Positions 596-62,060 of a stretch of 64,000 nt of DNA are shown here, one piece after another. The notes beneath the pieces were generated by a model. The model was not told the origin of the DNA and ran no database searches. It saw only the letters and a program-made list of their open reading frames with translations. The stretch is from Prasinococcaceae sp. CCMP 1430 (Eukaryota > Plantae > Prasinodermophyta). The position numbers and the translations under genes were made by a program. Location: contig RQSC01000314.1 in assembly GCA_013416795.1 (NCBI GenBank), forward strand, positions 1-64,000. Reading direction: 5' to 3'. Within the stretch, counting starts at the first letter, position 1. Each line of letters begins with the position of its first letter.

Positions 596-1332
596 NNNNN
601 NNNNNNNNNNNNNNNNNNNNNNNNNNNNNNNNNNNNNNNNNNNNNNNNNNNNNNNNNNNNNNNNNNNNNNNNNNNNNNNNNNNNNNNNNNNNNNNNNNNN
701 NNNNNNNNNNNNNNNNNNNNNNNNNNNNNNNNNNNNNNNNNNNNNNNNNNNNNNNNNNNNNNNNNNNNNNNNNNNNNNNNNNNNNNNNNNNNNNNNNNNN
801 NNNNNNNNNNNNNNNNNNNNNNNNNNNNNNNNNNNNNNNNNNNNNNNNNNNNNNNNNNNNNNNNNNNNNNNNNNNNNNNNNNNNNNNNNNNNNNNNNNNN
901 NNNNNNNNNNNNNNNNNNNNNNNNNNNNNNNNNNNNNNNNNNNNNNNNNNNNNNNNNNNNNNNNNNNNNNNNNNNNNNNNNNNNNNNNNNNNNNNNNNNN
1001 NNNNNNNNNNNNNNNNNNNNNNNNNNNNNNNNNNNNNNNNNNNNNNNNNNNNNNNNNNNNNNNNNNNNNNNNNNNNNNNNNNNNNNNNNNNNNNNNNNNN
1101 NNNNNNNNNNNNNNNNNNNNNNNNNNNNNNNNNNNNNNNNNNNNNNNNNNNNNNNNNNNNNNNNNNNNNNNNNNNNNNNNNNNNNNNNNNNNNNNNNNNN
1201 NNNNNNNNNNNNNNNNNNNNNNNNNNNNNNNNNNNNNNNNNNNNNNNNNNNNNNNNNNNNNNNNNNNNNNNNNNNNNNNNNNNNNNNNNNNNNNNNNNNN
1301 NNNNNNNNNNNNNNNNNNNNNNNNNNNNNNNN
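596..1332. other. assembly gap (N run); hides the 5' end/transit peptide of GBSS
   Basis: Run of N in the sequence. Confidence 0.99.
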
Positions 1333-32935: not shown

Positions 32936-35077
32936 TCACCTGCGCTTCTTCTTGCCCGCACCGCGGCTCCCGCCGCCACCGAACACGCTCTGCTCCATCG
33001 CGGACCGCTGGCGCCCGCCGGTGTTGGCGGTGCTTTTCTTCGCTGCGGCTTCGCGTTCGAGCTCATCCAGCGCCCTGATGTCATCGTCGTCCGAATCGAC
33101 CTCCCGCTTCTTCTTGTTCTTCTTGGACTTGGAGCCAATCTTTTTGTCGTCCTTCATTGACTTCCAGTCCCGAGCCATGGCCTCCTCGTCTCGAACGTTG
33201 TGGTCATCGTCGAAGCTGCCGCCGATGACCCCGGCGCGTGAGGCGTCCTGCCTGCGCCTCTTTCGCTCCTTCTTGGCCTTGTTGTCCTCGCGCCGCGTGC
33301 GCTCCTCCTGCTGCTGCTTGCGCCGCGTCTCGCGCTGCGCCTCGCGCTGCGCCTCGCGCTCAAGCTCGGCGGCCGCTCGCTCCGCCATGGCCTTCCGGCG
33401 CTGCTTCTCGCGCGCTTTGTCCTTGAATTGCACCTTGTCTGGGTCGACCTCCGAGGCCGTGAATCCCTCGAGCAGCGTCGACTTCGCCTTCTGCAGCTCG
33501 GGCATGCGCGGCATGCGCAGCAGCGCAAACATCATGGCCAGCTGCCCCCACGGTAGCTGGTTCATACGGAAGATGAAGCGGCACTGGTGCTCGCGGTATC
33601 CCCGCGCGAACGACACGAACGCCTTGGTGGCCTTCTCCAGCAGGTCGCGGTCTGCCGCCATGGCTGCGCGGGCAGACTGCAACAGCTCGTCCGACTCGGA
33701 GGCCATCCCCTCGCTGACGCTGACCTCCGCCTCCTCGACGCCCTCGCCATCATCCTCGCCGCTGCTCACTCGACCGGCCGCGTCCTCCCCTCCCGCCTCG
33801 AGCGGCACCTGCACGACGGGAACCTTTCTAATGTGCAGAAACTCGACGTACGAGTCCTCGTGCGGCATGAGCAGCGCGAGGCTCGCGCCGCGCTTGCCCA
33901 TGCGCGCGGCGCGCCCTACGCGATGCACGAAGGCGTTTGGATCCTGTGGAGCGTCAAATTGCACCACCCAGTCAACGTCGGGGATGTCGAGGCCACGCGC
34001 GGCCACATCGGTACACAGCAGTGCCGCAGAGCTCTGCCCCGCGAACGCTGCCAGCGCTGCGTCGCGCTGGCGCTGCGGCTGGCGGCCGTGCAGCGCGTGG
34101 AGCGGCGGTAGCGCGCGCGCGCCATCCAGACCGAGCACCGGCAGCAGTGCCGCGAAGTAGTCCACGCAGGCACATGTGAGGAAGTACACGATGAGCTTCT
34201 CCTCCCGGTGCTCCGCCAGGAAGCGGCAGAGCGCCGTCAGTTTGTGCCGCGCGGGCGCAAGCGCGTACTTGAGCTCAAGCGTCTCGGGGGTGCGCTGCTG
34301 GGAGGAGCCGCCACCGGCCGCGCCGCCGGCGGGTCGCGCGGCCTGCACGGCGACGCGCACGGGGTTGCGCATGCCCGCACGCGCCAGCTCGGCCACTGCC
34401 TCGGTCTGCGTCGCGGAGAAGAGCCCCGTGCGCCGCTGCTTGGGCAGATACTTCATGATGGCCTGCAGCTGGCGCTCGAAGCCCATCTCCAGGCAGCGGT
34501 CGGCCTCGTCCAACACTAGCAGCTCAAATGAGCGGAAATTGAGGGACGGCAGGCGCAGGAAGATGTCTGCCAGGCGCCCTGGCGTGCCGATGAGCACGTT
34601 GGCGCCGCTGTGCGCCGCCCGCGCGCGCTCGCCCTCGGCGTCGCCGCCGACCGCGCCGCCGCCAGCCGCCGCCTTCAGGGCGCGCACGTCGGCGAGCACG
34701 TCGGTGCCGCCCACGAGTAGCGCGGAGCGCAACGGCGCTTTGGGCAGCGCGGCAGCCTCCAGCAGTGGCTGCGCCACGCGTGCAATCTGCGTCGCCAGCT
34801 CGCGCGTCGGCGACACCACAAGCGCACCCACCTCCAAGGGGCGCAGCGGTGTCTCCAGGCGCGTCAGCATCTCCACCATTGGCACCACGAAGGCAAGCGT
34901 CTTGCCGGAGCCGGTCGTCGCGTCGACGGCGACGTCCTTATGACCGAGCAGCAGCGGGATGGTGGCTGCCTGCACGGGCGTCGCCTGCACGAAGCCTTCG
35001 ACCGAGAGCGCCTCAACGAGCCTCGCCGACGGCCCCGGCGACAGCGCCGCGAACGACGGGCGTGCGCCGCCCGCCAT
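32936..35077 (-). CDS. DDX55: DEAD-box RNA helicase DDX55/Spb4 (60S biogenesis)
   Basis: TPVQAATIP, TTGSGKTLAF, SPTRELA, GTPGRL, LDEADR, RRTGLFSAT, CTDVAARGLDIPDVDWVVQFDAP, FVHRVGRAARMG, AFVSFARGYREHQCRFIF; basic tail. Confidence 0.95.
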   Translation of the reverse strand: MAGGARPSFAALSPGPSARLVEALSVEGFVQATPVQAATIPLLLGHKDVAVDATTGSGKTLAFVVPMVEMLTRLETPLRPLEVGALVVSPTRELATQIARVAQPLLEAAALPKAPLRSALLVGGTDVLADVRALKAAAGGGAVGGDAEGERARAAHSGANVLIGTPGRLADIFLRLPSLNFRSFELLVLDEADRCLEMGFERQLQAIMKYLPKQRRTGLFSATQTEAVAELARAGMRNPVRVAVQAARPAGGAAGGGSSQQRTPETLELKYALAPARHKLTALCRFLAEHREEKLIVYFLTCACVDYFAALLPVLGLDGARALPPLHALHGRQPQRQRDAALAAFAGQSSAALLCTDVAARGLDIPDVDWVVQFDAPQDPNAFVHRVGRAARMGKRGASLALLMPHEDSYVEFLHIRKVPVVQVPLEAGGEDAAGRVSSGEDDGEGVEEAEVSVSEGMASESDELLQSARAAMAADRDLLEKATKAFVSFARGYREHQCRFIFRMNQLPWGQLAMMFALLRMPRMPELQKAKSTLLEGFTASEVDPDKVQFKDKAREKQRRKAMAERAAAELEREAQREAQRETRRKQQQEERTRREDNKAKKERKRRRQDASRAGVIGGSFDDDHNVRDEEAMARDWKSMKDDKKIGSKSKKNKKKREVDSDDDDIRALDELEREAAAKKSTANTGGRQRSAMEQSVFGGGGSRGAGKKKRR

Positions 35078-35783
35078 CGCTTCGACGGGGAGCGGGGTCA
35101 GCGCGCCCCCCTCCCCCGCGCGCGCTCGCGCGCTGCCTTTACGCGGCCTCCGCGGCGCGCACGAACTCCCTCAGCCCCGCAACGCCGCGGGGGGCGACGC
35201 CGCGCGCGCGCGCTGTGGCGGCGGCTGCGGCCGCCGGCGCATCGACCTCGGACGCCCATCCGCAAATCAAATGTAGATTCATTGTGATATGATATTTACT
35301 CTCCCGTGGCTTGTCATTACGCACGCTTTTTGACGTGCGAAGGGCGGCGGAGCCGCGGAGCTGCGGTTGGCCGGTTCCCCCTCGACGGCCGCGCGCAGTG
35401 CGGCGCGGGCGGGCGAGGCTAGGCCATGCGCTGGAGGTGCGCCACGCACGCGCGAGCCATCTATGCGGCGCGGGCGGGCGAGGCGCGCGCCGCCGGCGCC
35501 ACTCAGGGCGCGGAGCGGGGGGGGCTGCCGGCCGCGCGTGCCCTCCTCCTCTCCCTGTGCTGGAAGAGAGGGGCGGCGAGGGGTGAGGGAAAGGGTAGGG
35601 TCCGCTGCGGCTGAGGTGCCCGCGCGGGATTGCTGCCCTGGGCGTGGGAACCACCCGTTGGCGTTGGGGACGGCGGAGCTGTTGTGAGATAGTGGAGGGG
35701 GCTGACCTCGCCCCGGGCTCTTGCCGCTGAGCCATAGTGCTCGCACAACGCGGCCTGGCCTCGTTGGCGTGCCGCGTTGGGCG

Positions 35784-36351: not shown

Positions 36352-39300
36352 CTACAACGCCATCGCGCTCGCCTGTTTGTTGAGGTCGAAGCCATGCGCG
36401 ATCTGCACGTGCACGTTGACACATGCCAGGCATGCGGCGGCGTGCGAGAGGAGCGCGCCTGCACCCGCGACCGCCTCTGCGGCACCCCGCGCGGCGGAGG
36501 GATCGCCTCCCTCCGCGGCCATAGCAATTGCCTCGGCGCGCGCACGATGCTCGGCCGCTCTTAGTGCGTCTCTTGTTCCCTCGCCCATCGAGTGAAGCAT
36601 CGCGATCACCTTCTGCCCGTTGTGCACCAACGCCCAAAGCGCCGAAGCGGCGTGCGCGCGCGCCGCGGCGGTGTACGCCCCTCCGGTGCGGTCCCCAGCA
36701 ACCTGGATGAGCACGCGCAAGGGGCCACCGCCACTGCTGACGAAGTGTGCCTTGGCCTCGGATACGAACGCGCAGTTTCGCAGGAGGGCAACGGCGGCAG
36801 CGGCAGCACGCCGCGATGCCGCGCCTTTACCGCCCTCAGCGGGCGCCCGCGCGGCCACACACGCCAGCTGCACGAGACCGCAGAGCTTGGGCCCGCGCAG
36901 CACTGCGCTCGCGCCGTCGGCGTGCGCAGCGATTGCCGCCAACGTGAGCAGTGCCTGTTCTGCGAGACGGACCGCCGAGGCTGTGCCGACGACGACGCCT
37001 CCCTGCCTTTTCTTCCCCGAGGACTTCACAGACGCAGGCTTGCGCGTCGCCAGCGCCACGTCTGTCGACGACGGGTATGCTTCGCCAATGATGCGGCCGC
37101 ACGCGGCCAGCACGACGCTCTTCGGAGACCCGAGCACAGCCCTCGTCTCCGATCCGGCTGCGGCGCAGTGGGCGGCTCGCAACGAGGCTTTGATGAGAGC
37201 TGCCGGCGACTTGACGTCTGCGGCCGGGCCCACAGCCAGGCCCAGCGCACCGTTGTTATTGCCGGCCGCTAGCGCCCGCCGCGCGCCGCTGCCGCCGCTC
37301 GCAGCCACGTTCGCAACGAGCGCGATGAGCTCGAGTCGGAGGGCACCCCCGTCAGAAGTGCCCGATGCACAAGCTGCGGCGGAGCGCGCCACAGGCCACA
37401 GGGAGACAACGACCCTGGCGGCCCCTGCCGCAGCGGCGGCATCGGCGCCCCGCCTCGAGCCGAGCGCGAGGTGGCGCAGCAGGGACGTTGCACGCGTCGC
37501 ACCAGCGAGCAGCTGGGCCCTGCGGTTCGCGCCAGCACCTACGCCGCCGCTGAGCGTCCAGGCCTCCCGCGCGGCCAGTGCCTGCGCCGCCAGCGCCGTG
37601 TGCAGACCGGCATCAATTGTGGCTCCCTTGGCCGCACCCGAGTGCGCGATCAGGCTGCGCAGACAACTCAGCGCCGCCGCGCCCGTCGGCGACTCCTCGC
37701 CAGCACTGTTGACGATCGTGAGCAGGTCCATCGCCAGCTGTGCACCGTGCCTGTCCCCCTTCCCGAGGGCAGCTGCAGCCTCCGCCGGCGTCGCGAGCAG
37801 TGCTGCGGCGCCGCGGCAGACAGATGCGACAATTTCGGCGTTCGAAGTCACCGAGGGTGCCTTGAGGAGACGTGACACGCCAGCCAGGGCAGCCGACGCA
37901 AGCTGGCGCCCATCGGGGCCCTGCCACCACGGGGCGCTCTTGTCCCCTGTGAGCATGGCCAAGGCAGAAGAGGCGCTGGCCGCCGCCGCCGCGCGCTCCG
38001 CCTCTGCAGCCGGATCCTGCGCCAGGCCGCCTGCGGCGGCGAGCGCAGCGAGCACGCCAGCAGCGACGAGCGCCCCGCCGCATGCACGCAGTACCTGTCG
38101 GTGGGACTCGCTGCGGGCGGCCGCGATGCACATGAGCTCGCAGACCGCCGAGATTGCGCCGCACGCGTCCGCTGCGTGCGGGCCAGGGAACGCCACGTGC
38201 GCGAGGAGAGCTCCGGCATCCTCGTCGCCTTCTTCTGCGGCACTCGGCACACTCAAGGCCCGGAGGAGCACGGGCCACGTCTGATCCGCAGCAGGCAGTG
38301 GGCCACATGCAGCCTCGTCCAAGGTGTCAGTGGCGAGGACCGCGCGTGCGAGGGCCTCGCATGCGCCCCGGAGCACGCAGGGGGCCTGCGCACTGCGCTC
38401 GTTGGTGGCTGCCGCGGCGACCTCCCACAGCTGCAAACTGCGGGCGAGGCCAGCGGCGAGGTCGTGCGGCCGCCGCCCAGGCAGCTCCTCGGGGTCCTCG
38501 ACGCCAGCGGCAGCTCTTTGCTCGAGCATCGCCGTGACGCACCGCAACGCCGCGCCCCTGACGGCGGCGCACTCGCGCACGTCGAGCGACGCCAGCAAGG
38601 CGCACTGACCCGCCTCGAGCCAGGATCGCTCGACGAGCGCCCTGGACGCGTCGCAGCTTGCAAGGGCTGCCAACAGCGCGTGCGAGGTGCAGCGCGCGGG
38701 CGCCCACGGATCGCGACACGCGCGACTCAGCCAGTACGTGCCACCCGAAGCTGCAATGGACTGCGCCCACACGTCCTTCGAGCACGTTGATGCTATCGTC
38801 AGAAGGGCGTCGAGAGAGCTGTGCACGGCGCCTCGTCCGCGCAGGCCCACAGGTCTCTCGCGACGCTCCACAGCGACGCAGGTCACAAGGCTCGCAGAAC
38901 TTTTGGCAACAACATCCATGGCGTCGATAGACCCGGCGGCAGCTGCCACCGGCGCGAGGGCACAAATGAAGCGAATGGCGAGCACTCGCAGGCCGTAGCG
39001 CGCAGCGTCTTGCTTCGTGCGCCACTCAGTCGAGTCACGCCATGGAATGATAGAGTCCACCAGCATCTCGAGCAGGGAACGAGATTCGGGGTTGTCCGAG
39101 GTGCACACCGTTGCAGCCAGCGCGCTTGCCTCGCGCGAGGTGCCCCTCGCAGCAACCACGCCAGAAAGAGCCGCCAGCACGCGCATGCACTGCTGCGTCA
39201 CAACCACCAAAGAGCTCGGCACGCCGGTCGCGGCATCCAGGCTCGCGCTGTCCTGCTTCACCAGGGCATGGCAACATGCGTCCACTATCGGACAGAACGC

Positions 39301-42300
39301 GGCCCGCACAGCCGACGTAAGCATTGCCACAAAGCCGGTCGGGATATCGCCAGGAGGGGCCGCAACAAGGAGCTGCTCGGCGAGCGCGAGGACCTCAATC
39401 AGCAGCGCGCGGTCCGCTGATGTCGCGGGCACGACCGAGAGAAAGCGTGCCAGCGCCTCGCCCGCACCCGCAGCCAGCCAGCCCGAGGCCCCTTCGCACG
39501 ATGAGCAGGTGTCGCGCGCAATTGCGATCTGTGCCATCGCCTCCGAGTGGCCAGCGGCGCGCCCGAGGGCCTCCTTGAAGGCCCTCGGAGCAACGTCGAC
39601 ATGGAGCGCGCTGATGATGGACACGTCGAGCGAGGACATACTGCCCACGGCGCCGTCAACCGCGGTATCGCGCGCGCTCTGCAGCGATTCGAGCGCCTCG
39701 CGCGCGCTGCCCGAGAAGAGCACGAGCGACGCCACCAGCTCACGTGCGGCATCGAAGTCCGCAGATCCTGAAGTGGCGCCGGCGTCGCCTGTCACCTTCA
39801 CTTCACATGGGAGTTTGTAGGCGTCAGCAAATGGTCCAGGGAGTGCGATCATATGAGCAGGCACGCCGTCCGGCACCAGCGAATCGGCGCCTGCGAGGCC
39901 GAGGGCACGCGGATCGAAGACGATGTAGGCGATCGCCGCCGCCGCCGCCCGACGCACAGCCATAGATGCGTGGAACACGAGGGGCACGAGCTGCAGGAGC
40001 CGGCCGTCGTGTGCCAACCACTGACGCGCGACGCTAGAGGCACCCACGGCCGACGCGAGCAGTCCCGCAGCCGAGGCCCGAGCTGCGCCGCCCCAGCTCT
40101 CGCCCGAGCTGCACTCTCGCAGCAAGGGTTCAAGCAGTGTGTCATCGGACAGAATGGGCTCGAGACGGGGGTCGTGCGAGAGAGCGATGAGCTGCTCCGC
40201 TGCGGCCGCCCTGACATTGCCTCCGATGTTGAGGTTGCCGGCGACGCGCGCCAAGTCAGGCGCGTTAGCGCAGCTCCCGCTCGCACGGGAGCGGTACACC
40301 GTGCCAGGCATACCGTACGGGCGATCGGGTTCGTAGCCAGCAGCGAGCGCCGCGCCCAGCGGATCCGCAACGACGTCGCTCAGGTTGGCAGCCTCCGCGA
40401 GCGTCACAGCGCGCGCCGCAGCACCGCGCCACTCCACCTCAGCATCTGCGGCGGCGTCCTTGGCGCTCGCGCCCCCCTGGGCCACGTCGATGACGGTAGC
40501 GGCGGCTCGCGCACGGCACGCCGAATCCACGCTGAAAAGCGCGCGCAGGGCAGGCGCAAGCTGGGCAAGGTCGTTCCTGGCGGCGCTGGACCCGTAAAAG
40601 GGTGCATCCATGGCGGCTCCCTCGATGAGCGCGGAAAGCGAGCCCATCGCACTGCCGGCCGCGGAGGCCGCGGCAGATCCAGCGCGCGCCGCACACGCGA
40701 TCCACGGCGCACGGTCTACAATGCCGGCCCTACCCTCGGCAGTGCCCTGCGCAGCAGCGAGCAGGCACCGCGCGGCGTTCGCAGCGACATCCTCGACCTC
40801 GCAGTGCAACGCACTGCACGCTAGCGCGTCTAGTAGCTGCGGGGAGGGCAGCATGAGGACCGCGGAAGCGATAGGCCTCTCCCCGCCCGTTGCTGCACTC
40901 GCGGCCACCTCCGCCTCGACCTTGGCCGCGAGGACACCGAGAGCAGCCGCGCGCACCTCGTTTGATTTGTGAGACACGAGGCTCGCTGTCGCGCCGGCAG
41001 CCTCGAGAGCCGCACCCGAGCCCAGCGCGGCAGCCTGAATCAGCAGGGCCTGGGTCCTAAGTGCCGCCTCGGCCGGTTTCGGCGCTGCTCCGAGCGTCGG
41101 AACGGCCCGGGCGATGGCCTCGAGTGCGGCAGGCACGTCGACCTTCGCATCACTGCCGATGTCTGCCACCTCGCCCAGGTGTGCGGCGGCGTCCTCGAGG
41201 CTCTCAAGCGCCGCGGCAGCCTCAGATGCCAGGGCGAAAGCCGCCGCGGCAGCTGGGTCTGCAGCAGCAGCGTACGGCCTGAGTCTCGCAGCCAGCTTCG
41301 GCCGGCTCATCTGCATGGCGCCGGTGAAGGACGCGCGGGCGATGCGCCCCGCCAGCGGAGCCGGAACAGTGACGGCCGCAACCTCGGGCTCCAACAGCTC
41401 CAAGAACGCGGCAGCCACAGACAGGACGCGCGTCAGCGCCCTGGCGATGGCGTCAGTACCGCCAGCATCCACGTCTCTCTCGGCGACCTCGGCAGCGCTG
41501 GAGAGGGCCTCGAAGTACCCCTTGAAGCGCGCGCTGGCTTGCAGCACAAGCTTGCCTCGGGCATCACCCTTCGTGATGATGTCCTCATCTTTGACGCCAA
41601 GGAGCGGCACAGCAACTGCGAGTAGCGGGAGCAGCTCCTGGTTGCGAGTTGCCGTGTGAAGCGCGCCGAGCGCGTGATGCGCGACGATGTGCGCCGCTTC
41701 AGAGACGTCCACCCACTCGCCGTCGGACCCAACCATTCCCAGCGGAGGCGTAGGGTACGAGCGCGGGAAGTCAACCGTACCCGGTGTGTGCCGCGACTCA
41801 CCTGCCTCGGTGCTGGGTGCTGGCGCAGCAGGGAGCGACACGTCGAAAGATCCGTCCTGGGCCAGCGCGAGAGCGCGGGCTGCCGACCTCAGCACGGCGG
41901 CCAGCGCGGTGGCGGCCAGCGCTGGCAAGCCCGAGCCTGAGGTCGCATGCAGGCACGCCGACACGTTGCGCACCAGCGCTTTGCGGGCCAACACGGCCCC
42001 CGCCATGCAGTCCACAGAAGCGCGATCCTTGAGCTCCGTGAGCACACGAAGCGCCACGTCCGCATCTGCGGCGTGCTCAAGGCGCAAGTTGATTTCGAAC
42101 AACGCCTGTGCGTCCTCGGGAGCCACGGGAGGTGCGCGCAGGCACAGACCCCAAGGAACGCCCCCGTCGCCTGTGCCGCTGACGCCAGCGCGCGCTTCGG
42201 CCGCTGCGGCGCGGCCGCGGGCGTACTCGGCTCGCTCGGCCTCGCCGAACAGACCTGCCGCCGCGAGCGCTGCGCCGTCGCCGGGGTGCGGCAGCGGGGA

Positions 42301-42822
42301 CACATTGGCGGTGCCGGCCGCCTCCACCTGCGCGTCATCGCCCCCAGCCACCTCGCCATCGTCCGGCGCGACGCTGGGGGGCGTTGCCGAGTCGGGCGCG
42401 GCGCCGCCGCGCAGGTCGTCCGCCAGGGGCACTTCGCTCGCTGGCGGCGACCCGCACACGGGCGCGCGCATCATTGCCTCCTGCAGCGCGTCGAGCTCCA
42501 TGGGGAGCGCAGGGACCTCGTCTCTGAGGTCTTCCCACACCGCCGCGAAGAACTCCACCGCGCCAAGCTCGGCCAGCCTGGCCTTGCACGCCTCGTCCGC
42601 TGCGAGCGACGTGAGCAGCTGTGCGACGTCGCAGTGGCGCGTGCAGTCGGCGAAGTTGTACCACTCCATGAGCGCCTCGAGGAAGCCCGTGCACGCGACG
42701 GCGTCGGCCGGAGTGGCGAGCCCGCTGTCGAGCTTGAACGCCGCGCTGTCCAGCGCGCGGCAGCGCACCTCCCGCAGGCGGTGCCCGAGCTTCTGCGCGA
42801 GCGCCGCCGGCAGCGCGCCCGT
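36352..42822 (-). CDS. RTTN: rotatin (RTTN/Ana3)-like large ARM-repeat centriole protein; main exon
   Basis: N-terminal KLGHRLREVRCRALDSAAFKL...LEALMEWYNF matches the RTTN N-terminal signature. About 2150 codons of helical repeats. C-terminal AASALWALVHNGQK. Confidence 0.8.
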   Translation of the reverse strand, partial: TGALPAALAQKLGHRLREVRCRALDSAAFKLDSGLATPADAVACTGFLEALMEWYNFADCTRHCDVAQLLTSLAADEACKARLAELGAVEFFAAVWEDLRDEVPALPMELDALQEAMMRAPVCGSPPASEVPLADDLRGGAAPDSATPPSVAPDDGEVAGGDDAQVEAAGTANVSPLPHPGDGAALAAAGLFGEAERAEYARGRAAAAEARAGVSGTGDGGVPWGLCLRAPPVAPEDAQALFEINLRLEHAADADVALRVLTELKDRASVDCMAGAVLARKALVRNVSACLHATSGSGLPALAATALAAVLRSAARALALAQDGSFDVSLPAAPAPSTEAGESRHTPGTVDFPRSYPTPPLGMVGSDGEWVDVSEAAHIVAHHALGALHTATRNQELLPLLAVAVPLLGVKDEDIITKGDARGKLVLQASARFKGYFEALSSAAEVAERDVDAGGTDAIARALTRVLSVAAAFLELLEPEVAAVTVPAPLAGRIARASFTGAMQMSRPKLAARLRPYAAAADPAAAAAFALASEAAAALESLEDAAAHLGEVADIGSDAKVDVPAALEAIARAVPTLGAAPKPAEAALRTQALLIQAAALGSGAALEAAGATASLVSHKSNEVRAAALGVLAAKVEAEVAASAATGGERPIASAVLMLPSPQLLDALACSALHCEVEDVAANAARCLLAAAQGTAEGRAGIVDRAPWIACAARAGSAAASAAGSAMGSLSALIEGAAMDAPFYGSSAARNDLAQLAPALRALFSVDSACRARAAATVIDVAQGGASAKDAAADAEVEWRGAAARAVTLAEAANLSDVVADPLGAALAAGYEPDRPYGMPGTVYRSRASGSCANAPDLARVAGNLNIGGNVRAAAAEQLIALSHDPRLEPILSDDTLLEPLLRECSSGESWGGAARASAAGLLASAVGASSVARQWLAHDGRLLQLVPLVFHASMAVRRAAAAAIAYIVFDPRALGLAGADSLVPDGVPAHMIALPGPFADAYKLPCEVKVTGDAGATSGSADFDAARELVASLVLFSGSAREALESLQSARDTAVDGAVGSMSSLDVSIISALHVDVAPRAFKEALGRAAGHSEAMAQIAIARDTCSSCEGASGWLAAGAGEALARFLSVVPATSADRALLIEVLALAEQLLVAAPPGDIPTGFVAMLTSAVRAAFCPIVDACCHALVKQDSASLDAATGVPSSLVVVTQQCMRVLAALSGVVAARGTSREASALAATVCTSDNPESRSLLEMLVDSIIPWRDSTEWRTKQDAARYGLRVLAIRFICALAPVAAAAGSIDAMDVVAKSSASLVTCVAVERRERPVGLRGRGAVHSSLDALLTIASTCSKDVWAQSIAASGGTYWLSRACRDPWAPARCTSHALLAALASCDASRALVERSWLEAGQCALLASLDVRECAAVRGAALRCVTAMLEQRAAAGVEDPEELPGRRPHDLAAGLARSLQLWEVAAAATNERSAQAPCVLRGACEALARAVLATDTLDEAACGPLPAADQTWPVLLRALSVPSAAEEGDEDAGALLAHVAFPGPHAADACGAISAVCELMCIAAARSESHRQVLRACGGALVAAGVLAALAAAGGLAQDPAAEAERAAAAASASSALAMLTGDKSAPWWQGPDGRQLASAALAGVSRLLKAPSVTSNAEIVASVCRGAAALLATPAEAAAALGKGDRHGAQLAMDLLTIVNSAGEESPTGAAALSCLRSLIAHSGAAKGATIDAGLHTALAAQALAAREAWTLSGGVGAGANRRAQLLAGATRATSLLRHLALGSRRGADAAAAAGAARVVVSLWPVARSAAACASGTSDGGALRLELIALVANVAASGGSGARRALAAGNNNGALGLAVGPAADVKSPAALIKASLRAAHCAAAGSETRAVLGSPKSVVLAACGRIIGEAYPSSTDVALATRKPASVKSSGKKRQGGVVVGTASAVRLAEQALLTLAAIAAHADGASAVLRGPKLCGLVQLACVAARAPAEGGKGAASRRAAAAAVALLRNCAFVSEAKAHFVSSGGGPLRVLIQVAGDRTGGAYTAAARAHAASALWALVHNGQKVIAMLHSMGEGTRDALRAAEHRARAEAIAMAAEGGDPSAARGAAEAVAGAGALLSHAAACLACVNVHVQIAHGFDLNKQASAMAL

Positions 42823-42823
42823 C

Positions 42824-43293
42824 TAGTCGAATACTTGCATATTTGCCTTCTTTAGCAACTACTTGCGCTGATGTTCCTGCAGCTCGTACTAATTTAGCTC
42901 CTTGTGTCGGCGCTAATTCAATATTATGAATTTCTGAACCTACTGGAATTGCTGTTAAAGGTAATGCGTTTCCTGTTTTTAAAGGTGCTATCGGACTTGA
43001 TTCAATTACTTGACCTAATTCTAACCCTTGTGGAGCTAAAATATAGTGTTGTTGTTCGCTGGTTTCAATTTTTGCAAGAAATGCGTTACGGTTTGGATCA
43101 TATTCTAATCCCATAACTTTTCCTGGATTATTTTGAGCGAAACGTTTCCATAAAACAAAACGGTAACGTCGTTTATGCCCACCACCGCGATGTCGAGCTG
43201 TAATTCGTCCTTGGTTATTGCGACCTTTTGAACGTTGGAAGCCCTTAATATTAGCACTTTTTTTAGTTTGTGCTGTATTTGGGAATCTAACTA
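42824..43293 (-). pseudogene. rpl2: organelle-derived (probably plastid) rpl2 fragment (NUPT/NUMT-like), no internal stops, lacking the C-terminal part
   Basis: Abrupt AT-rich island with A/T-ending codons encoding GRNNQGRITARHRGGGHKRRYR..LEYDPNRNA..GNALPL..IHNIEL..GAKLVRAAGTSAQVVAKEGKYASIRL. Confidence 0.92.
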
Positions 43294-43508
43294 CCCCCCC
43301 CCCACACACCGCACGCACGCGCGCGCGCGCGCGTGCGCGCCCCGCCATCAAACGCCATTGAAAAAAAATTCAAACGCGACGGGCGCGCGCGCAAAAAAAA
43401 AAAAGAAATGCGCCCCAAAAAGAAAAAAAAGAAAAAAGTGCGCGGGCGCGGTGCCGCATGTGTGAGAGACTTCCGCCGCGGCGATGGCGGAGGCGAAACC
43501 CCGTCGAA

Positions 43509-44233
43509 ATGTGCATCTGGGGTTTACACGAGGATTCGGTCGCACGTGAAATGTTAAAAAAACGCGGGGTGCGATGCGCGCAATCCGGGAAATGCGCCGC
43601 GCGTCGTGTTAGGGCGCGACGGGCGCCACACCGCGCGGCGGCGCCGGCAGCGGCGAGGGGGGAGGGGGGGGGGATTGCGCGAGGAACCCTGCCCCACCGT
43701 TCGCCTCCTCTCCTCCTTCGCCCCGCGCCTCTGTTGGGGGGGGGGAAGGGGTGCGGGCGGACGGGGCGGGCCGGGGAGGCGCCCCGGCCTCCCGCGCGCA
43801 TCGCCGACGCCGACGAGCGCGTGTCCGGGGTGGGGGCCTTACCCCGAGGAAGGAGGCCAGGCTGCGGGTGGGAAGGTACGCCGCGCGTGCACGCGCGGCG
43901 AGGGGTTTGCAGGGTAGAGAGCGCTAGGCAGCATTGGCCGGGTGGGACCGGAGGCGTGCCATGCGCCGCGCGTGCTGCCCGCCGCCTGGCCGCCGCCCAA
44001 CAGCGCGCACGAAATACACGCAAGACACACTCAGCCTCGGGCCTCGCTGGCTTGCTCGCGGCTATTTATTTCCCTTGCAAGAACACTGCGTCAAGGCAGC
44101 GGTCGTACAACCCAAGAGGACAAGTCAGTTCCACCGCTTGAGCCTTACTTTACACCGTCCGGACACAACACCCTTGAACGCAGCTCCTGCCCTCGCATCG
44201 AGCAGCTCTGTACCAGCGAACGCCTGTGGCTGA
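43509..44233 (+). CDS. possible unannotated spliced gene; intron 43876-44003; start uncertain
   Basis: A 128-nt GTACG...AACAG intron joins two ORF-track frames in phase (..PGCGWE|ARTKYTQDTLSLGPRWLARGYLFP..). No family recognised. Confidence 0.3.
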
Positions 44234-44540: not shown

Positions 44541-46804
44541 TCAGCGCACTGCAACGATTGTCTCAACGCCCCCGCCGCGGCACCACCAGCCGAGATCACC
44601 GTCGCTTGCCTGGGGAAGCGGGCAGCGGGCGGACGTGTCTGACTGGCCTGCACTCTTGCCCGCTTCTAGCATTCTCTGCCTGCATCCAGGCCCGGCGTGC
44701 ACAATCTCTGTAAAGCCCTCGCTGCGCAAGGCGGACACGGCAGCGGCCATCGCACCGTCTACGACAGCCGTCTCGAGCACGACGGCGCCCAGGTTTGATC
44801 CACTAGGTCTGACCTCAGCCAGAGCGGTCGTGAGCGCCGATACGGGGTCGACGGCACTCGTGCCGACGCGCAGCGCACACACCACGCCAGCCTGAGCATC
44901 GCTTGCCCGCAGCGAGCGCATCGCAGATAGTAAAGAGCCCGCCGACAGTGGCGTTCTGGCCGTGTCAACACTGCCACATGGCTCGCCTGGCGCTGCGTCG
45001 TACGCCTGCAAGCGCGCACCAGCGAGCGTGTCCCACGCCGTCCCATCGACCTCGGCCACGCCACCGGACATGCGCCACAGCTGCCGTATCAACCGCTTCG
45101 GCAGGCCGACCAACCACCCTGCCCAACGGGTGACGAGCCACCCGCCACTCATCGCGGCACCGAGACACCTGACTCGTGCCCCTGCGTCGCCTCGGACTGC
45201 CTGTCCCTCGCCGCCGACTATCTGGATGGAACGCCCAGATGGCGTCGTGACGGCGGCTGCGCTCACGGCCGCACGCAGCTCGGCTCCCTCGGCGGCACTC
45301 GCGGCGACCGCTGCCACACTCGCGCCACGCGCGGCGACGCGCAGCCCCAGCGCTAGTCCATCCGAGCCCGGGGCGGCGTCCACGACCAAGCCGCCCCTGC
45401 CGCCCCCGCATGCCCGAATAATGACGTCCAGCGCGGCCTCATCGCCGTCGCTGCCCTCGCCCAGCGCCGCGAGCGACGCAAACGCCGCGGTGCGGCGTTC
45501 CTGACCTCCAACCATGCGTTCCCGCGCGGGGAGCCTCGTCACGAGGCCCTCTCGCGTGGTCACGCTGTCGTAGCTGCCGAGGGTTCCCCACGCGCGCTGC
45601 GCGTCATCAGCGTCGGCGTCCGCGCTCGCCGCCACGCGAGTGCCCGTCTTCGACGGCGCCACGGTGGTCCCCGCGATTGCCTCCGACGACGGCATAAGCG
45701 CGCGTCTGACCCTCGCGACGAGCCTGGTGGCCTTTCGCCGCACCTTGCGGCCCAGCAAGCCGCCCTCGCGCCTTCCGCCTGCCTTCCAGCTCCCGGCCGC
45801 ATAGTGGCGCAGCACGACGCGCTCATCGCCCTCAGGCACTGCCAGCGGCCCACCGCCACCTGCCGCGTCGGCGAGCTCCCAGCGCCCCCTGCCCGCGTCC
45901 CAATTGGTTGCCATCGCCACGCGAGGCAGGAAGCGCACACGCCACTTCTCGTCGCCAGCCGCGGCGCGCCGCGCGGCGTGGCGCAGCGCGTCTGTGAAAA
46001 GGCCCGGGCCGGTGCGCTCAAGGGTGGACGAATCCGAGTCTGCGCCGAGCGCGCGCGCGCTGCCGTCGCCGAGCACCGCGTCCGCGATGCGCTCCGCCAT
46101 CAGCAACAGCGCCGGGTGTCCCGCCCTTGCCGCGAAGGCCCACTGCAGCGCCTGCCGCCGCCTGACGTCACCCCTCGCGAGCATGGCGTCCACGCCCGCC
46201 GAGTCGGCCTCCCAGCCGGCGACGAGGGCGTCGTCCGGCCTCAGCCAGCCCGAGAGGGGCGCCGCCGCGGCTGTGTCCAAGTCGGCGTATACGCCGCCCT
46301 CGAGATACACCACTAGATAGCGGAACAGGTCGGCGCGCTCGACGGGCGCGTCCATCGACTCGTACGCGCGCACGACACGCGCGGGCAGCCGTCCGTCGCG
46401 CGCGGCGCTGCGAAGCAGCGCCGCGCACTCCTCGTCGCCGTAGTAGCGCAGCTCGCCTCCCGATGCCGCGGCCCACGTGGCGCGCAGCTCGCGCGTCGGA
46501 GCGTCGAGCGCCGCGGCGGACACCTCGCGGCCCGTCTGGTGCACGACGGGCGGGATGCTGTACGCCGCCCATTCGGCGCGCCCAAGCACCTCCTGGGGCA
46601 CGCGAGCGGGCATCGGCGCCGTCATCCGTGCACTTCTCCCCGTGCCCGCACGGAGGAGCGAGATTGCCGCCGCCGCCGCCGCCGCGCACAGCGCGAGCGC
46701 CGCGAGCGTCGCCGCCGCGCGCCACGCTCTGCCACCCCGGCCACCTCGCCCGCCCGCGCGCCCCCGCGCCGCGCGCCGGGGGAACGCGCGCGACGCGTTG
46801 CCAT
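44541..46804 (-). CDS. GT32 (OCH1/DXD-motif) glycosyltransferase with a degenerate C-terminal Rossmann/methyltransferase-like region; ATG at 46804 out of frame
   Basis: IPPVVHQT, ERADLFRYLVVYLEGGVYADLDT, QWAFAARAGHP, TGPGLFT. In-frame signal anchor AATLAALALCAAAAAAISLL lies upstream of Met46625. Confidence 0.82.
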
Positions 46805-61758: not shown

Positions 61759-62060
61759 NNNNNNNNNNNNNNNNNNNNNNNNNNNNNNNNNNNNNNNNNN
61801 NNNNNNNNNNNNNNNNNNNNNNNNNNNNNNNNNNNNNNNNNNNNNNNNNNNNNNNNNNNNNNNNNNNNNNNNNNNNNNNNNNNNNNNNNNNNNNNNNNNN
61901 NNNNNNNNNNNNNNNNNNNNNNNNNNNNNNNNNNNNNNNNNNNNNNNNNNNNNNNNNNNNNNNNNNNNNNNNNNNNNNNNNNNNNNNNNNNNNNNNNNNN
62001 NNNNNNNNNNNNNNNNNNNNNNNNNNNNNNNNNNNNNNNNNNNNNNNNNNNNNNNNNNNN
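61759..62060. other. assembly gap (N run)
   Basis: Run of N in the sequence. Confidence 0.99.

What the first reader, a model, noticed from the sequence alone, without database searches (positions are those of the whole stretch)
42823..43348. Organellar rpl2 DNA inserted at the rotatin 5' end forms a perfect in-frame GT-AG intron, and is also in frame with the nuclear ATG
Seen: ATG43348 gives MAGRARARAR, then GTGCGT at 43318 (the donor used by many introns here), a G10 run, about 470 bp of AT-rich stop-free rpl2, and TAG at 42825-42823. Splicing 43318-42823 (496 nt, phase 0) yields MAGRARARAR-TGALPAALAQKLGHRLREVR..., restoring rotatin, which otherwise has no start. The acceptor AG lies at the rpl2/nuclear junction. 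Unspliced, the same ATG reads an Arg/Ala-rich leader fused in frame to about 155 aa of L2. Inference: a recent endosymbiotic transfer caught creating a new intron and/or a proto-targeted L2 fusion. Alternative: gap-filling with high-copy organelle reads next to a homopolymer.
Basis: partly seen in the sequence, partly recalled or inferred. Interest (0 to 1): 0.85.

Follow-up and report, generated by a model that had tools for sequence, protein, structure and literature searches.

The report
Plastid rpl2 piece replacing rotatin start
A 470-base copy of this green alga's own chloroplast rpl2 gene sits in the nuclear scaffold exactly where wild relatives carry the start codon of the centriole gene rotatin, so it is either a very young chloroplast-to-nucleus insertion that broke the gene or an assembly error, and nothing shows that it works as an intron.

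Summary
Window 43293..42824 (minus strand) is 470 bp, 38.5% GC, in a ~70% GC scaffold. It matches nt 62-531 of the same strain's plastid rpl2 at 470 of 470 bases. The ATG (43348), GTGCGT (43318), G10 run, junction TAG (42825-42823) and the start-less rotatin ORF (42822..36352) are all as described.

Three Tara Oceans metagenome scaffolds from wild Prasinoderma carry the same locus without rpl2. In its place they have about 207 bp of 82% GC nuclear DNA holding the real start, MGREMGDAAA-TGALPAAL..., with no intron. So the plastid piece replaces the start codon and ten codons. It is not a plain insertion.

The "exon 1" (MAGRARARAR) is 5' flanking DNA. The relatives differ there by frameshifting indels, so it is non-coding. 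Sixteen in-frame GT-AG pairs exist, so the "perfect intron" is expected by chance. The L2 fusion is truncated and runs into out-of-frame rotatin.

I lean towards a very young nuclear plastid insert (NUPT) with a target deletion (about 0.6) over an assembly artefact (about 0.35). No same-strain reads or transcripts across the junctions could be reached. The scan had noted this same stretch in an overlapping window, and two other unverified plastid fragments on other pieces of this genome.

The parts
42824..43293 (-). Plastid rpl2 fragment (CDS nt 62-531, L2 residues 22-177 of 276), in sense orientation relative to rotatin
   Evidence: 470/470 identical to L001:466-935. There are 1, 2 and 6 mismatches to the Tara plastid contigs L002, L003 and L004. 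The protein is 100% identical to P0134 and 96% to P. coloniale CCMP1220 chloroplast L2 YP_009057491.1. Pfam L2_N and partial L2_C.
36352..42822 (-). Rotatin ORF, single exon, 2156 codons plus stop, lacking its start codon and first 10 codons
   Evidence: RTTN_N hit. It is colinear, gap-free and stop-free against three Tara orthologues (dS 0.023-0.026; dN/dS 0.26-0.29). The orthologues begin MGREMGDAAA directly before TGALPAAL.
42823..42825 (-). TAG spanning the right junction (T and A from plastid, G nuclear).
43294..43303 (-). G10 run ending the nuclear left flank. Relatives read GGGGTGGGGTGGGGGG followed by T here.
   Evidence: Four of the 16 flank mismatches to L006 fall in the last 22 nt before the junction.
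43313..43318 (-). It reads GTGGGT in L006 and GTGCGT in L005.
43346..43348 (-). Upstream ATG in the ancestral 5' flank, about 234 nt before the true start in relatives. It opens the 337-codon chimeric ORF.
43294..43663 (-). Nuclear 5' flank (T-rich promoter-like tracts, (GC)n), orthologous to L006:1-383
   Evidence: 95.7% identity with several indels.
42667..42669 (-). First in-frame ATG left in the rotatin ORF (codon 52), inside the RTTN_N domain

Best explanation
A 470-bp piece of the strain's own chloroplast rpl2 gene lies in the nuclear scaffold in place of about 207 bp of very GC-rich nuclear DNA. In wild relatives that DNA holds the rotatin start codon and its first ten codons. The most likely origin is a very young nuclear plastid DNA insert (NUPT). 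Inferred steps: a double-strand break in the G-rich 5' end of rotatin was resected by about 200 bp, and end joining captured a plastid fragment. As assembled, the allele has lost its normal initiation codon. The junction creates an in-frame TAG, and the next ATG is codon 52 inside the conserved RTTN_N domain. The gene is therefore probably null or hypomorphic in this culture strain. The GT-AG 'intron' and the L2 fusion ORF are by-products of the sequence arrangement, not evolved features. Shown: plastid origin, zero divergence, replacement of the ancestral start, absence from three wild haplotypes, near-blunt junctions. Inferred: that the chimeric molecule exists in the cells, the repair mechanism, and the loss of function.
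For: Origin and youth:
- 470/470 identity to the same strain's plastid rpl2.
- Wild plastid haplotypes differ at 1-6 of these 470 sites.
- Lineage-specific nuclear divergence is about 0.012 per site, so about 5-6 changes would be expected if the insert were as old as the split from the Tara lineages. None is seen.

Pre-insertion site:
- It is defined by three independent Tara scaffolds (L005, L006, L007). Both flanks are colinear, there is no rpl2, and 206-208 bp including ATGGGGCGCGAAATGGGCGACGCGGCGGC sit there instead.

Junctions:
- They share 1 nt (left, T) and 0 nt (right). This matches the blunt or 1-nt joins reported for recent rice NUPTs (PMC3698918).
- The site is a promoter/5' end, the kind of open chromatin where organelle DNA preferentially inserts (same paper).
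- There are no Ns at either joint, although this assembly marks uncertain joins with N runs, including single Ns. With no shared k-mer at either junction, a graph or overlap assembler would need junction-spanning reads.

Gene state:
- The rotatin ORF is otherwise intact, as expected for a recent event.
- The window lineage has slightly more private nonsynonymous changes: 18 nonsynonymous to 15 synonymous, against 18 to 34 in the Tara lineages pooled (Fisher p = 0.077).
Against: - No read, long molecule or transcript of the same strain spanning either junction could be reached.
- The scaffold is a draft with gaps (737, 302, 1 and 1 N) next to simple repeats.
- The missing nuclear segment is 82% GC with G/C runs of 7-8. 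That is exactly what short-read assemblies lose; Tara contig L007 itself starts there with an artefactual poly-G run.
- Mismatches to the relatives cluster in the last 22 nt of the left flank, as at a low-quality contig end.
- Documented recent NUPTs rarely delete target DNA (2 of 14 in rice).
- Zero divergence is also what an artefact gives.
- In my understanding, algae with a single plastid per cell are expected to have few NUPTs.
Confidence: 0.6

Rival explanations
1. Assembly or gap-closing artefact. The 82% GC, G-run-rich 207 bp at the rotatin 5' end was not assembled, and a fragment of high-copy plastid DNA was placed in the gap. The strain would then really have the wild-type start.
For: - The draft scaffold has N gaps at low-complexity sequence.
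- The missing segment is the kind that drops out of short-read data. Tara contigs L005 and L007 also break or degrade at this point.
- Replacement rather than insertion is the natural outcome of a mis-filled gap, whereas real NUPTs seldom delete target DNA.
- Identity to the plastid is 100%.
- Flank mismatches cluster next to the left joint.
- The rotatin ORF is fully intact.
Against: - Both joints are direct, without N, and share no more than 1 nt with the plastid sequence. Overlap or de Bruijn methods cannot make them without reads that contain them.
- A random chimeric read would not return to the same nuclear locus 207 bp further on in the right orientation.
- Elsewhere this assembly marks unresolved joins with N, even single ones.
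Confidence: 0.35
2. One reading: the insert is real and is spliced out as a 496-nt phase-0 GT-AG intron (43318..42823). This would give MAGRARARAR-TGALPAAL... and so rescue rotatin with a new first exon. That would be a new intron born from plastid DNA.
For: - The GT and AG are present and in frame.
- In my understanding GTGCGT resembles donors of GC-rich green algae, and unverified scan notes describe GT-rich sequence after donors in this genome.
- The AT-rich interior would stand out from GC-rich exons.
Against: - Sixteen in-frame GT-AG combinations exist, so the fit is expected by chance.
- The ancestral gene has no intron here, and its true start lies in the deleted segment.
- The proposed exon 1 is non-coding 5' flank in relatives, with non-3n indels, and the donor reads GTGGGT in L006.
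- It is unknown whether transcription starts upstream of 43348.
- The 3' end (AAAGAAGGCAAATATGCAAGTATTCGACTAG) is purine-rich. It lacks a pyrimidine tract and the CTGAC/(CA)n features that scan notes ascribe to introns here.
- No spliced product is in the protein collections searched.
Confidence: 0.06
3. The unspliced ORF (337 codons from ATG 43348) is a nascent nuclear gene for a plastid-targeted L2.
For: The Arg/Ala-rich leader is in frame with 155 L2 residues.
Against: - Only residues 22-177 of 276 are present. The Ribosomal_L2_C match covers 51 of 126 profile positions.
- The C-terminal 160 residues are rotatin DNA read out of frame.
- An intact plastid rpl2 is expressed in the same strain.
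- No such protein appears in the collections.
Confidence: 0.01

Closest known systems
NUPTs: nuclear integrants of plastid DNA captured by non-homologous end joining at double-strand breaks (for example the indica-specific rice NUPTs, Wang & Timmis 2013, PMC3698918)
   Same: The fragment is identical to the plastid and flanked by nuclear DNA. It is absent at the orthologous pre-insertion site in close relatives. The junctions are blunt or share 1 nt. The location is a promoter/5' gene end.
   Different: It comes with a loss of about 207 bp of target DNA, which was seen in only 2 of 14 rice cases. It is in a picoalga. It removes a start codon. It is not verified at read level.
Organelle-derived spliceosomal introns or exons in nuclear genes (reports of an intron of mitochondrial DNA origin and of NUPT/NUMT-derived exon patches; recalled from memory, not read here)
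   Same: Organelle DNA lies inside a nuclear gene, bounded by GT and AG in a compatible phase.
   Different: There is no transcript evidence. The upstream 'exon' is ancestral non-coding flank. The ancestral N-terminus is deleted rather than preserved. The in-frame fit is expected by chance.
Organelle-nuclear chimeras produced by draft assembly, scaffolding or gap closing
   Same: Identity to a high-copy organelle is 100%. The piece sits at a hard-to-sequence GC-rich, homopolymer-rich spot in a gapped draft. It replaces rather than adds to the local sequence.
   Different: The joints carry no Ns and no overlap. Both nuclear sides are adjacent and correctly oriented.

Membership tests
NUPT (nuclear plastid DNA insert) | Sequence derived from the plastid genome of the same lineage | tested here: met
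   470/470 identity to the same-strain plastid rpl2 in its plastid operon context. The published mtDNA paper lists no rpl2.
NUPT (nuclear plastid DNA insert) | Nuclear DNA on both sides, and an orthologous site in relatives that lacks the insert | tested here: met
   Both flanks align to three Tara scaffolds that lack rpl2.
NUPT (nuclear plastid DNA insert) | End-joining type junctions (blunt or short microhomology) | tested here: met
   1 nt (left) and 0 nt (right) are shared. This compares with PMC3698918.
NUPT (nuclear plastid DNA insert) | Physical existence of the chimeric molecule (reads or PCR across both junctions) | not testable with these tools
   No same-strain genomic reads or contigs could be reached.
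Spliceosomal intron | GT...AG boundaries in a phase that keeps the ORF | tested here: met
   43318/42823, phase 0. However, 16 in-frame combinations exist, so the fit is uninformative.
Spliceosomal intron | Upstream exon is coding, and the intron position is shared or explains the protein N-terminus | tested here: not met
   Relatives start at MGREMGDAAA without an intron. The region upstream of that start has frameshifting indels.
Spliceosomal intron | Spliced transcripts | not testable with these tools
   No rotatin 5' transcript of this strain was found in the collections.
Spliceosomal intron | Branch site and acceptor context like other introns of the genome | tested here: inconclusive
   The 3' end is purine-rich with no CTGAC. 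My attempt to derive intron rules from this window gave too few cases.
Functional transferred rpl2 gene (endosymbiotic gene transfer) | Complete L2 coding sequence with its own stop | tested here: not met
   Only residues 22-177 of 276 are present, fused to out-of-frame rotatin.
Rotatin (RTTN) | RTTN_N domain at the N-terminus of a protein of about 2,000 aa or more | tested here: met
   Pfam PF14726, E 1.9e-13, at aa 18-102 of a 2156-codon ORF.

The most novel reading that the evidence does not exclude
The insert is real, and the cell splices the plastid DNA out from a cryptic donor in the old 5' leader. That would be a spliceosomal intron and a new first coding exon born in one step from a chloroplast DNA capture, in a strain whose wild relatives still show the intron-less ancestral state. 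A milder variant: the insert is real and unspliced, so the culture strain is a natural rotatin knock-out. That could bear on why no flagellate stage has been seen in culture, although the published genome analysis predicts one (PMC7455551).
Probability: 0.06. Interest if true: 0.8.

Novelty: new member of a known kind. Interest (0 to 1): 0.3.

Why it matters
If real, this is a dated, zero-divergence plastid-to-nucleus transfer in a picoalga, with its pre-insertion site preserved in wild populations. It would be a clean case for studying how such inserts form, here with a target deletion, and what they do to a gene. It would also mean that the reference strain lacks a normal start for rotatin, a centriole/basal-body gene. 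That matters for arguments about a hidden flagellate stage. If it is an artefact, the rotatin gene model of this assembly should be corrected: true start MGREMGDAAA, about 207 bp missing. The other plastid fragments noted in this genome would then also deserve suspicion.

Tried and rejected
Searches that found nothing:
- Exact DNA scans of JGI metagenome and transcriptome contigs for the first 38 nt of the rotatin ORF and for 41 nt of the left flank.
- A protein search with the first 200 rotatin residues for short fragments.
- An exact look-up of the upstream 694-aa glycosyltransferase-like ORF, to reach another same-strain contig.
- The exact look-up of the helicase ORF found only a transcript, which proves strain identity but does not reach the junction.
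- No chimeric L2 protein was among the L2 search hits of 126-402 aa.
- The full-length rotatin search returned only the Tara cluster. Proteins of 350-1186 aa were never covered by any search.

Other attempts:
- I tried to derive this genome's intron rules from the window by pattern scans. They gave nothing usable. GTGCGT simply occurs 40 and 39 times on the two strands.

Rejected readings:
- Mitochondrial origin: the published mtDNA paper lists no rpl2, and the operon context is plastid.
- Bacterial contamination: bacterial L2 proteins are at most about 62% identical.
- No other AT-rich island in the window looks organellar.

Full report
**What is in the sequence.**
Read on the minus strand, the region is as follows:
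- T-rich and (GC)n nuclear DNA;
- ATG at 43348;
- GTGCGT at 43318;
- a G10 run (43303-43294);
- a 470-bp block of 38.5% GC (43293-42824);
- GC-rich DNA again.

The scaffold around it is about 70% GC. The block gives Pfam Ribosomal_L2_N and the first 51 of 126 positions of Ribosomal_L2_C. The ORF that opens at 42822 gives the RTTN_N domain of rotatin at residues 18-102. That ORF runs as one exon of 2156 codons to the stop at 36352. A TAG at 42825-42823 closes the rotatin frame directly upstream. The first ATG inside the ORF is codon 52 (42669), within the conserved domain. From ATG 43348 an unspliced frame reads 337 codons: a short Arg/Ala leader, 155 L2 residues, then rotatin DNA out of frame.

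**Where the block comes from.**
- A search with the L2 piece found a cluster containing chloroplast L2 of Prasinoderma coloniale (YP_009057491.1). It is 96% identical. The cluster also holds a transcriptome-derived protein (P0134) that is 100% identical. Bacterial L2 proteins reach only about 60%.
- The contig encoding P0134 (L001, JGI sample 3300016765) carries rpl23-rpl2-rps19-rpl22-rps3-rpl16-rpl14-rpl5-rps8. Tara plastid contigs of 60-76 kb show the same operon next to psaJ, rps18 and a Mg-chelatase gene.
- At DNA level the block is 470/470 identical to L001:466-935, that is rpl2 CDS nt 62-531. Wild plastid haplotypes differ at 1, 2 and 6 sites.
- The same JGI sample contains the exact 713-aa helicase encoded at window 32939-35077. 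Its transcript is 100% identical to the window over about 2.37 kb. The plastid reference is therefore from the same strain.
- The published P. coloniale mitochondrial genome paper lists no rpl2, and that genome is 54% GC (PMC3873408). The chloroplast genome has rpl2 and is 34% GC (PMC4194372).
- The host is P. coloniale or a very close relative, in line with an earlier scan note and the 69.8% GC reported for that genome (PMC7455551).

**What should be there.**
A search with the whole rotatin ORF returned one cluster of Tara Oceans proteins of 2162-2219 aa. Three scaffolds from different samples (L005, L006, L007) carry the orthologous locus.
- Their rotatin is colinear with the window over all 2156 codons, with no gaps or stops. 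dS is 0.023-0.026. These are wild populations of essentially the same species.
- None contains rpl2. Between the G-rich tract and GACGGGCGCGCTGCC they have 206-208 bp of 82% GC DNA, ending in ATGGGGCGCGAAATGGGCGACGCGGCGGC. The protein therefore begins MGREMGDAAA-TGALPAALAQKL with no intron.
- The window's left flank (43294-43663) aligns to L006:1-383 at 95.7% with several indels, including the ATG at 43348.
- The plastid piece therefore replaces the ancestral start codon, ten codons and about 175 bp of leader. It is not a plain insertion.

**The proposed exon and intron.**
- Upstream of the true ATG the three wild sequences differ by indels that are not multiples of three, so the same DNA is read in different frames. 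The region is non-coding.
- In L006 the upstream ATG happens to be in frame with rotatin; in L005 it is not.
- The proposed donor reads GTGGGT in L006.
- In the window there are seven GT within 60 nt of the ATG (four in phase 0) and four in-frame AG at or just after the junction. That gives sixteen in-frame pairs. An apparently perfect intron is what chance gives here.
- The 3' end of the candidate intron is purine-rich plastid coding sequence.
- I could not derive the genome's own intron rules from this window. Unverified scan notes describe GT-rich sequence after donors and CTGAC plus (CA)n before acceptors. The donor side would fit that; the acceptor side would not.
- No spliced or chimeric product is present in the collections I could search.
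- Splicing is not excluded, but nothing supports it.
- The L2 fusion cannot be a working L2. It lacks 21 N-terminal and 99 C-terminal residues and ends in out-of-frame sequence.

**Real insert or artefact.**

For a real, very young NUPT:
- The two joints share 1 and 0 nt with the plastid sequence. This is like the blunt and 1-nt joins of recent rice NUPTs, which also favour open chromatin (PMC3698918).
- Both nuclear sides are adjacent and correctly oriented.
- There is no N at either joint, although this assembly uses N runs of 737, 302, 1 and 1 elsewhere.
- With no shared k-mers, an assembler would need reads that contain each joint.
- Zero differences in 470 bp compare with about 5-6 expected if the copy were as old as the split from the wild haplotypes (lineage divergence about 0.012 per site). 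This makes it much younger than that split.
- The window lineage shows a mild, non-significant excess of private nonsynonymous changes in rotatin: 18 nonsynonymous to 15 synonymous, against 18 to 34 (p = 0.077).

For an artefact:
- The scaffold is a gapped draft whose gaps sit at simple repeats.
- The missing 207 bp is 82% GC with G/C runs.
- The Tara assemblies themselves break or degrade at this point; L007 starts with a false poly-G run.
- Mismatches to the relatives cluster in the last 22 nt of the left flank.
- Real NUPTs usually do not delete target DNA (2 of 14).
- 100% identity is what misplaced plastid reads would give.

No read-level or same-strain transcript evidence across the joints was reachable. 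I put the real insert at about 0.6 and the artefact at about 0.35.

**Consequences.**
If real, the strain's rotatin has no normal start. It is probably null or N-terminally truncated unless the cryptic splice works. The published genome analysis argued from retained flagellar genes that P. coloniale can make flagellate cells, though none has been seen (PMC7455551). A broken centriole gene in the culture strain would bear on that. If it is an artefact, the gene model needs the 207 bp and the MGREMGDAAA start restored in the assembly.

**Relation to earlier scan notes.**
The same stretch had been flagged in an overlapping window (s1-370990). Two other plastid fragments (chlB, psbA) were flagged on other pieces of this genome but not followed up. 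They should be tested together with this one.

**Verdict.**
This is a new member of a known kind (a NUPT), if it is real.

Noticed in passing
window 596-1332, 28379, 47277, 61759-62060: There are N runs of 737, 1, 1 and 302 bases. The long ones abut simple repeats: (GC)n before the first, and about 90 bp of (CA)n after the last. The assembly is a gapped, scaffolded draft, which does not obviously match the gap-free long-read description in the P. coloniale genome paper.
   Followed up: partly
L008:1-35 vs window ~35230-35270 (minus strand): The first ~35 nt of the same-strain helicase transcript do not match the window directly upstream of the otherwise 100% identical 2.37 kb. This could be a spliced 5' leader exon or a chimeric transcript end.
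   Followed up: no
L007:1-25: This Tara scaffold starts with about 25 G where the other two read GGGGTGGGGTGGGGGGTGGGG. It looks like a poly-G sequencing or assembly artefact at the very spot where the window's junction lies.
   Followed up: partly
protein P0002 (ENA metagenome, 274 aa): This L2 protein has a bacterial-like first ~50 residues, while the rest is nearly identical to Prasinoderma plastid L2. It is probably a chimeric metagenome contig.
   Followed up: no
window 36355-42822 (rotatin) vs L005-L007: The window lineage has 18 private nonsynonymous and 15 private synonymous changes (for example R96W, C1051R, P1402L), against 18 and 34 in the three wild lineages pooled (Fisher p = 0.077). 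This is a weak hint of relaxed constraint in the culture strain.
   Followed up: partly
window 44544-46625 (minus strand): A 694-aa ORF upstream of rotatin has a weak glycosyltransferase DXD-region match (PF04488, E 6e-8). It is not on record as an exact protein anywhere in the collection.
   Followed up: no
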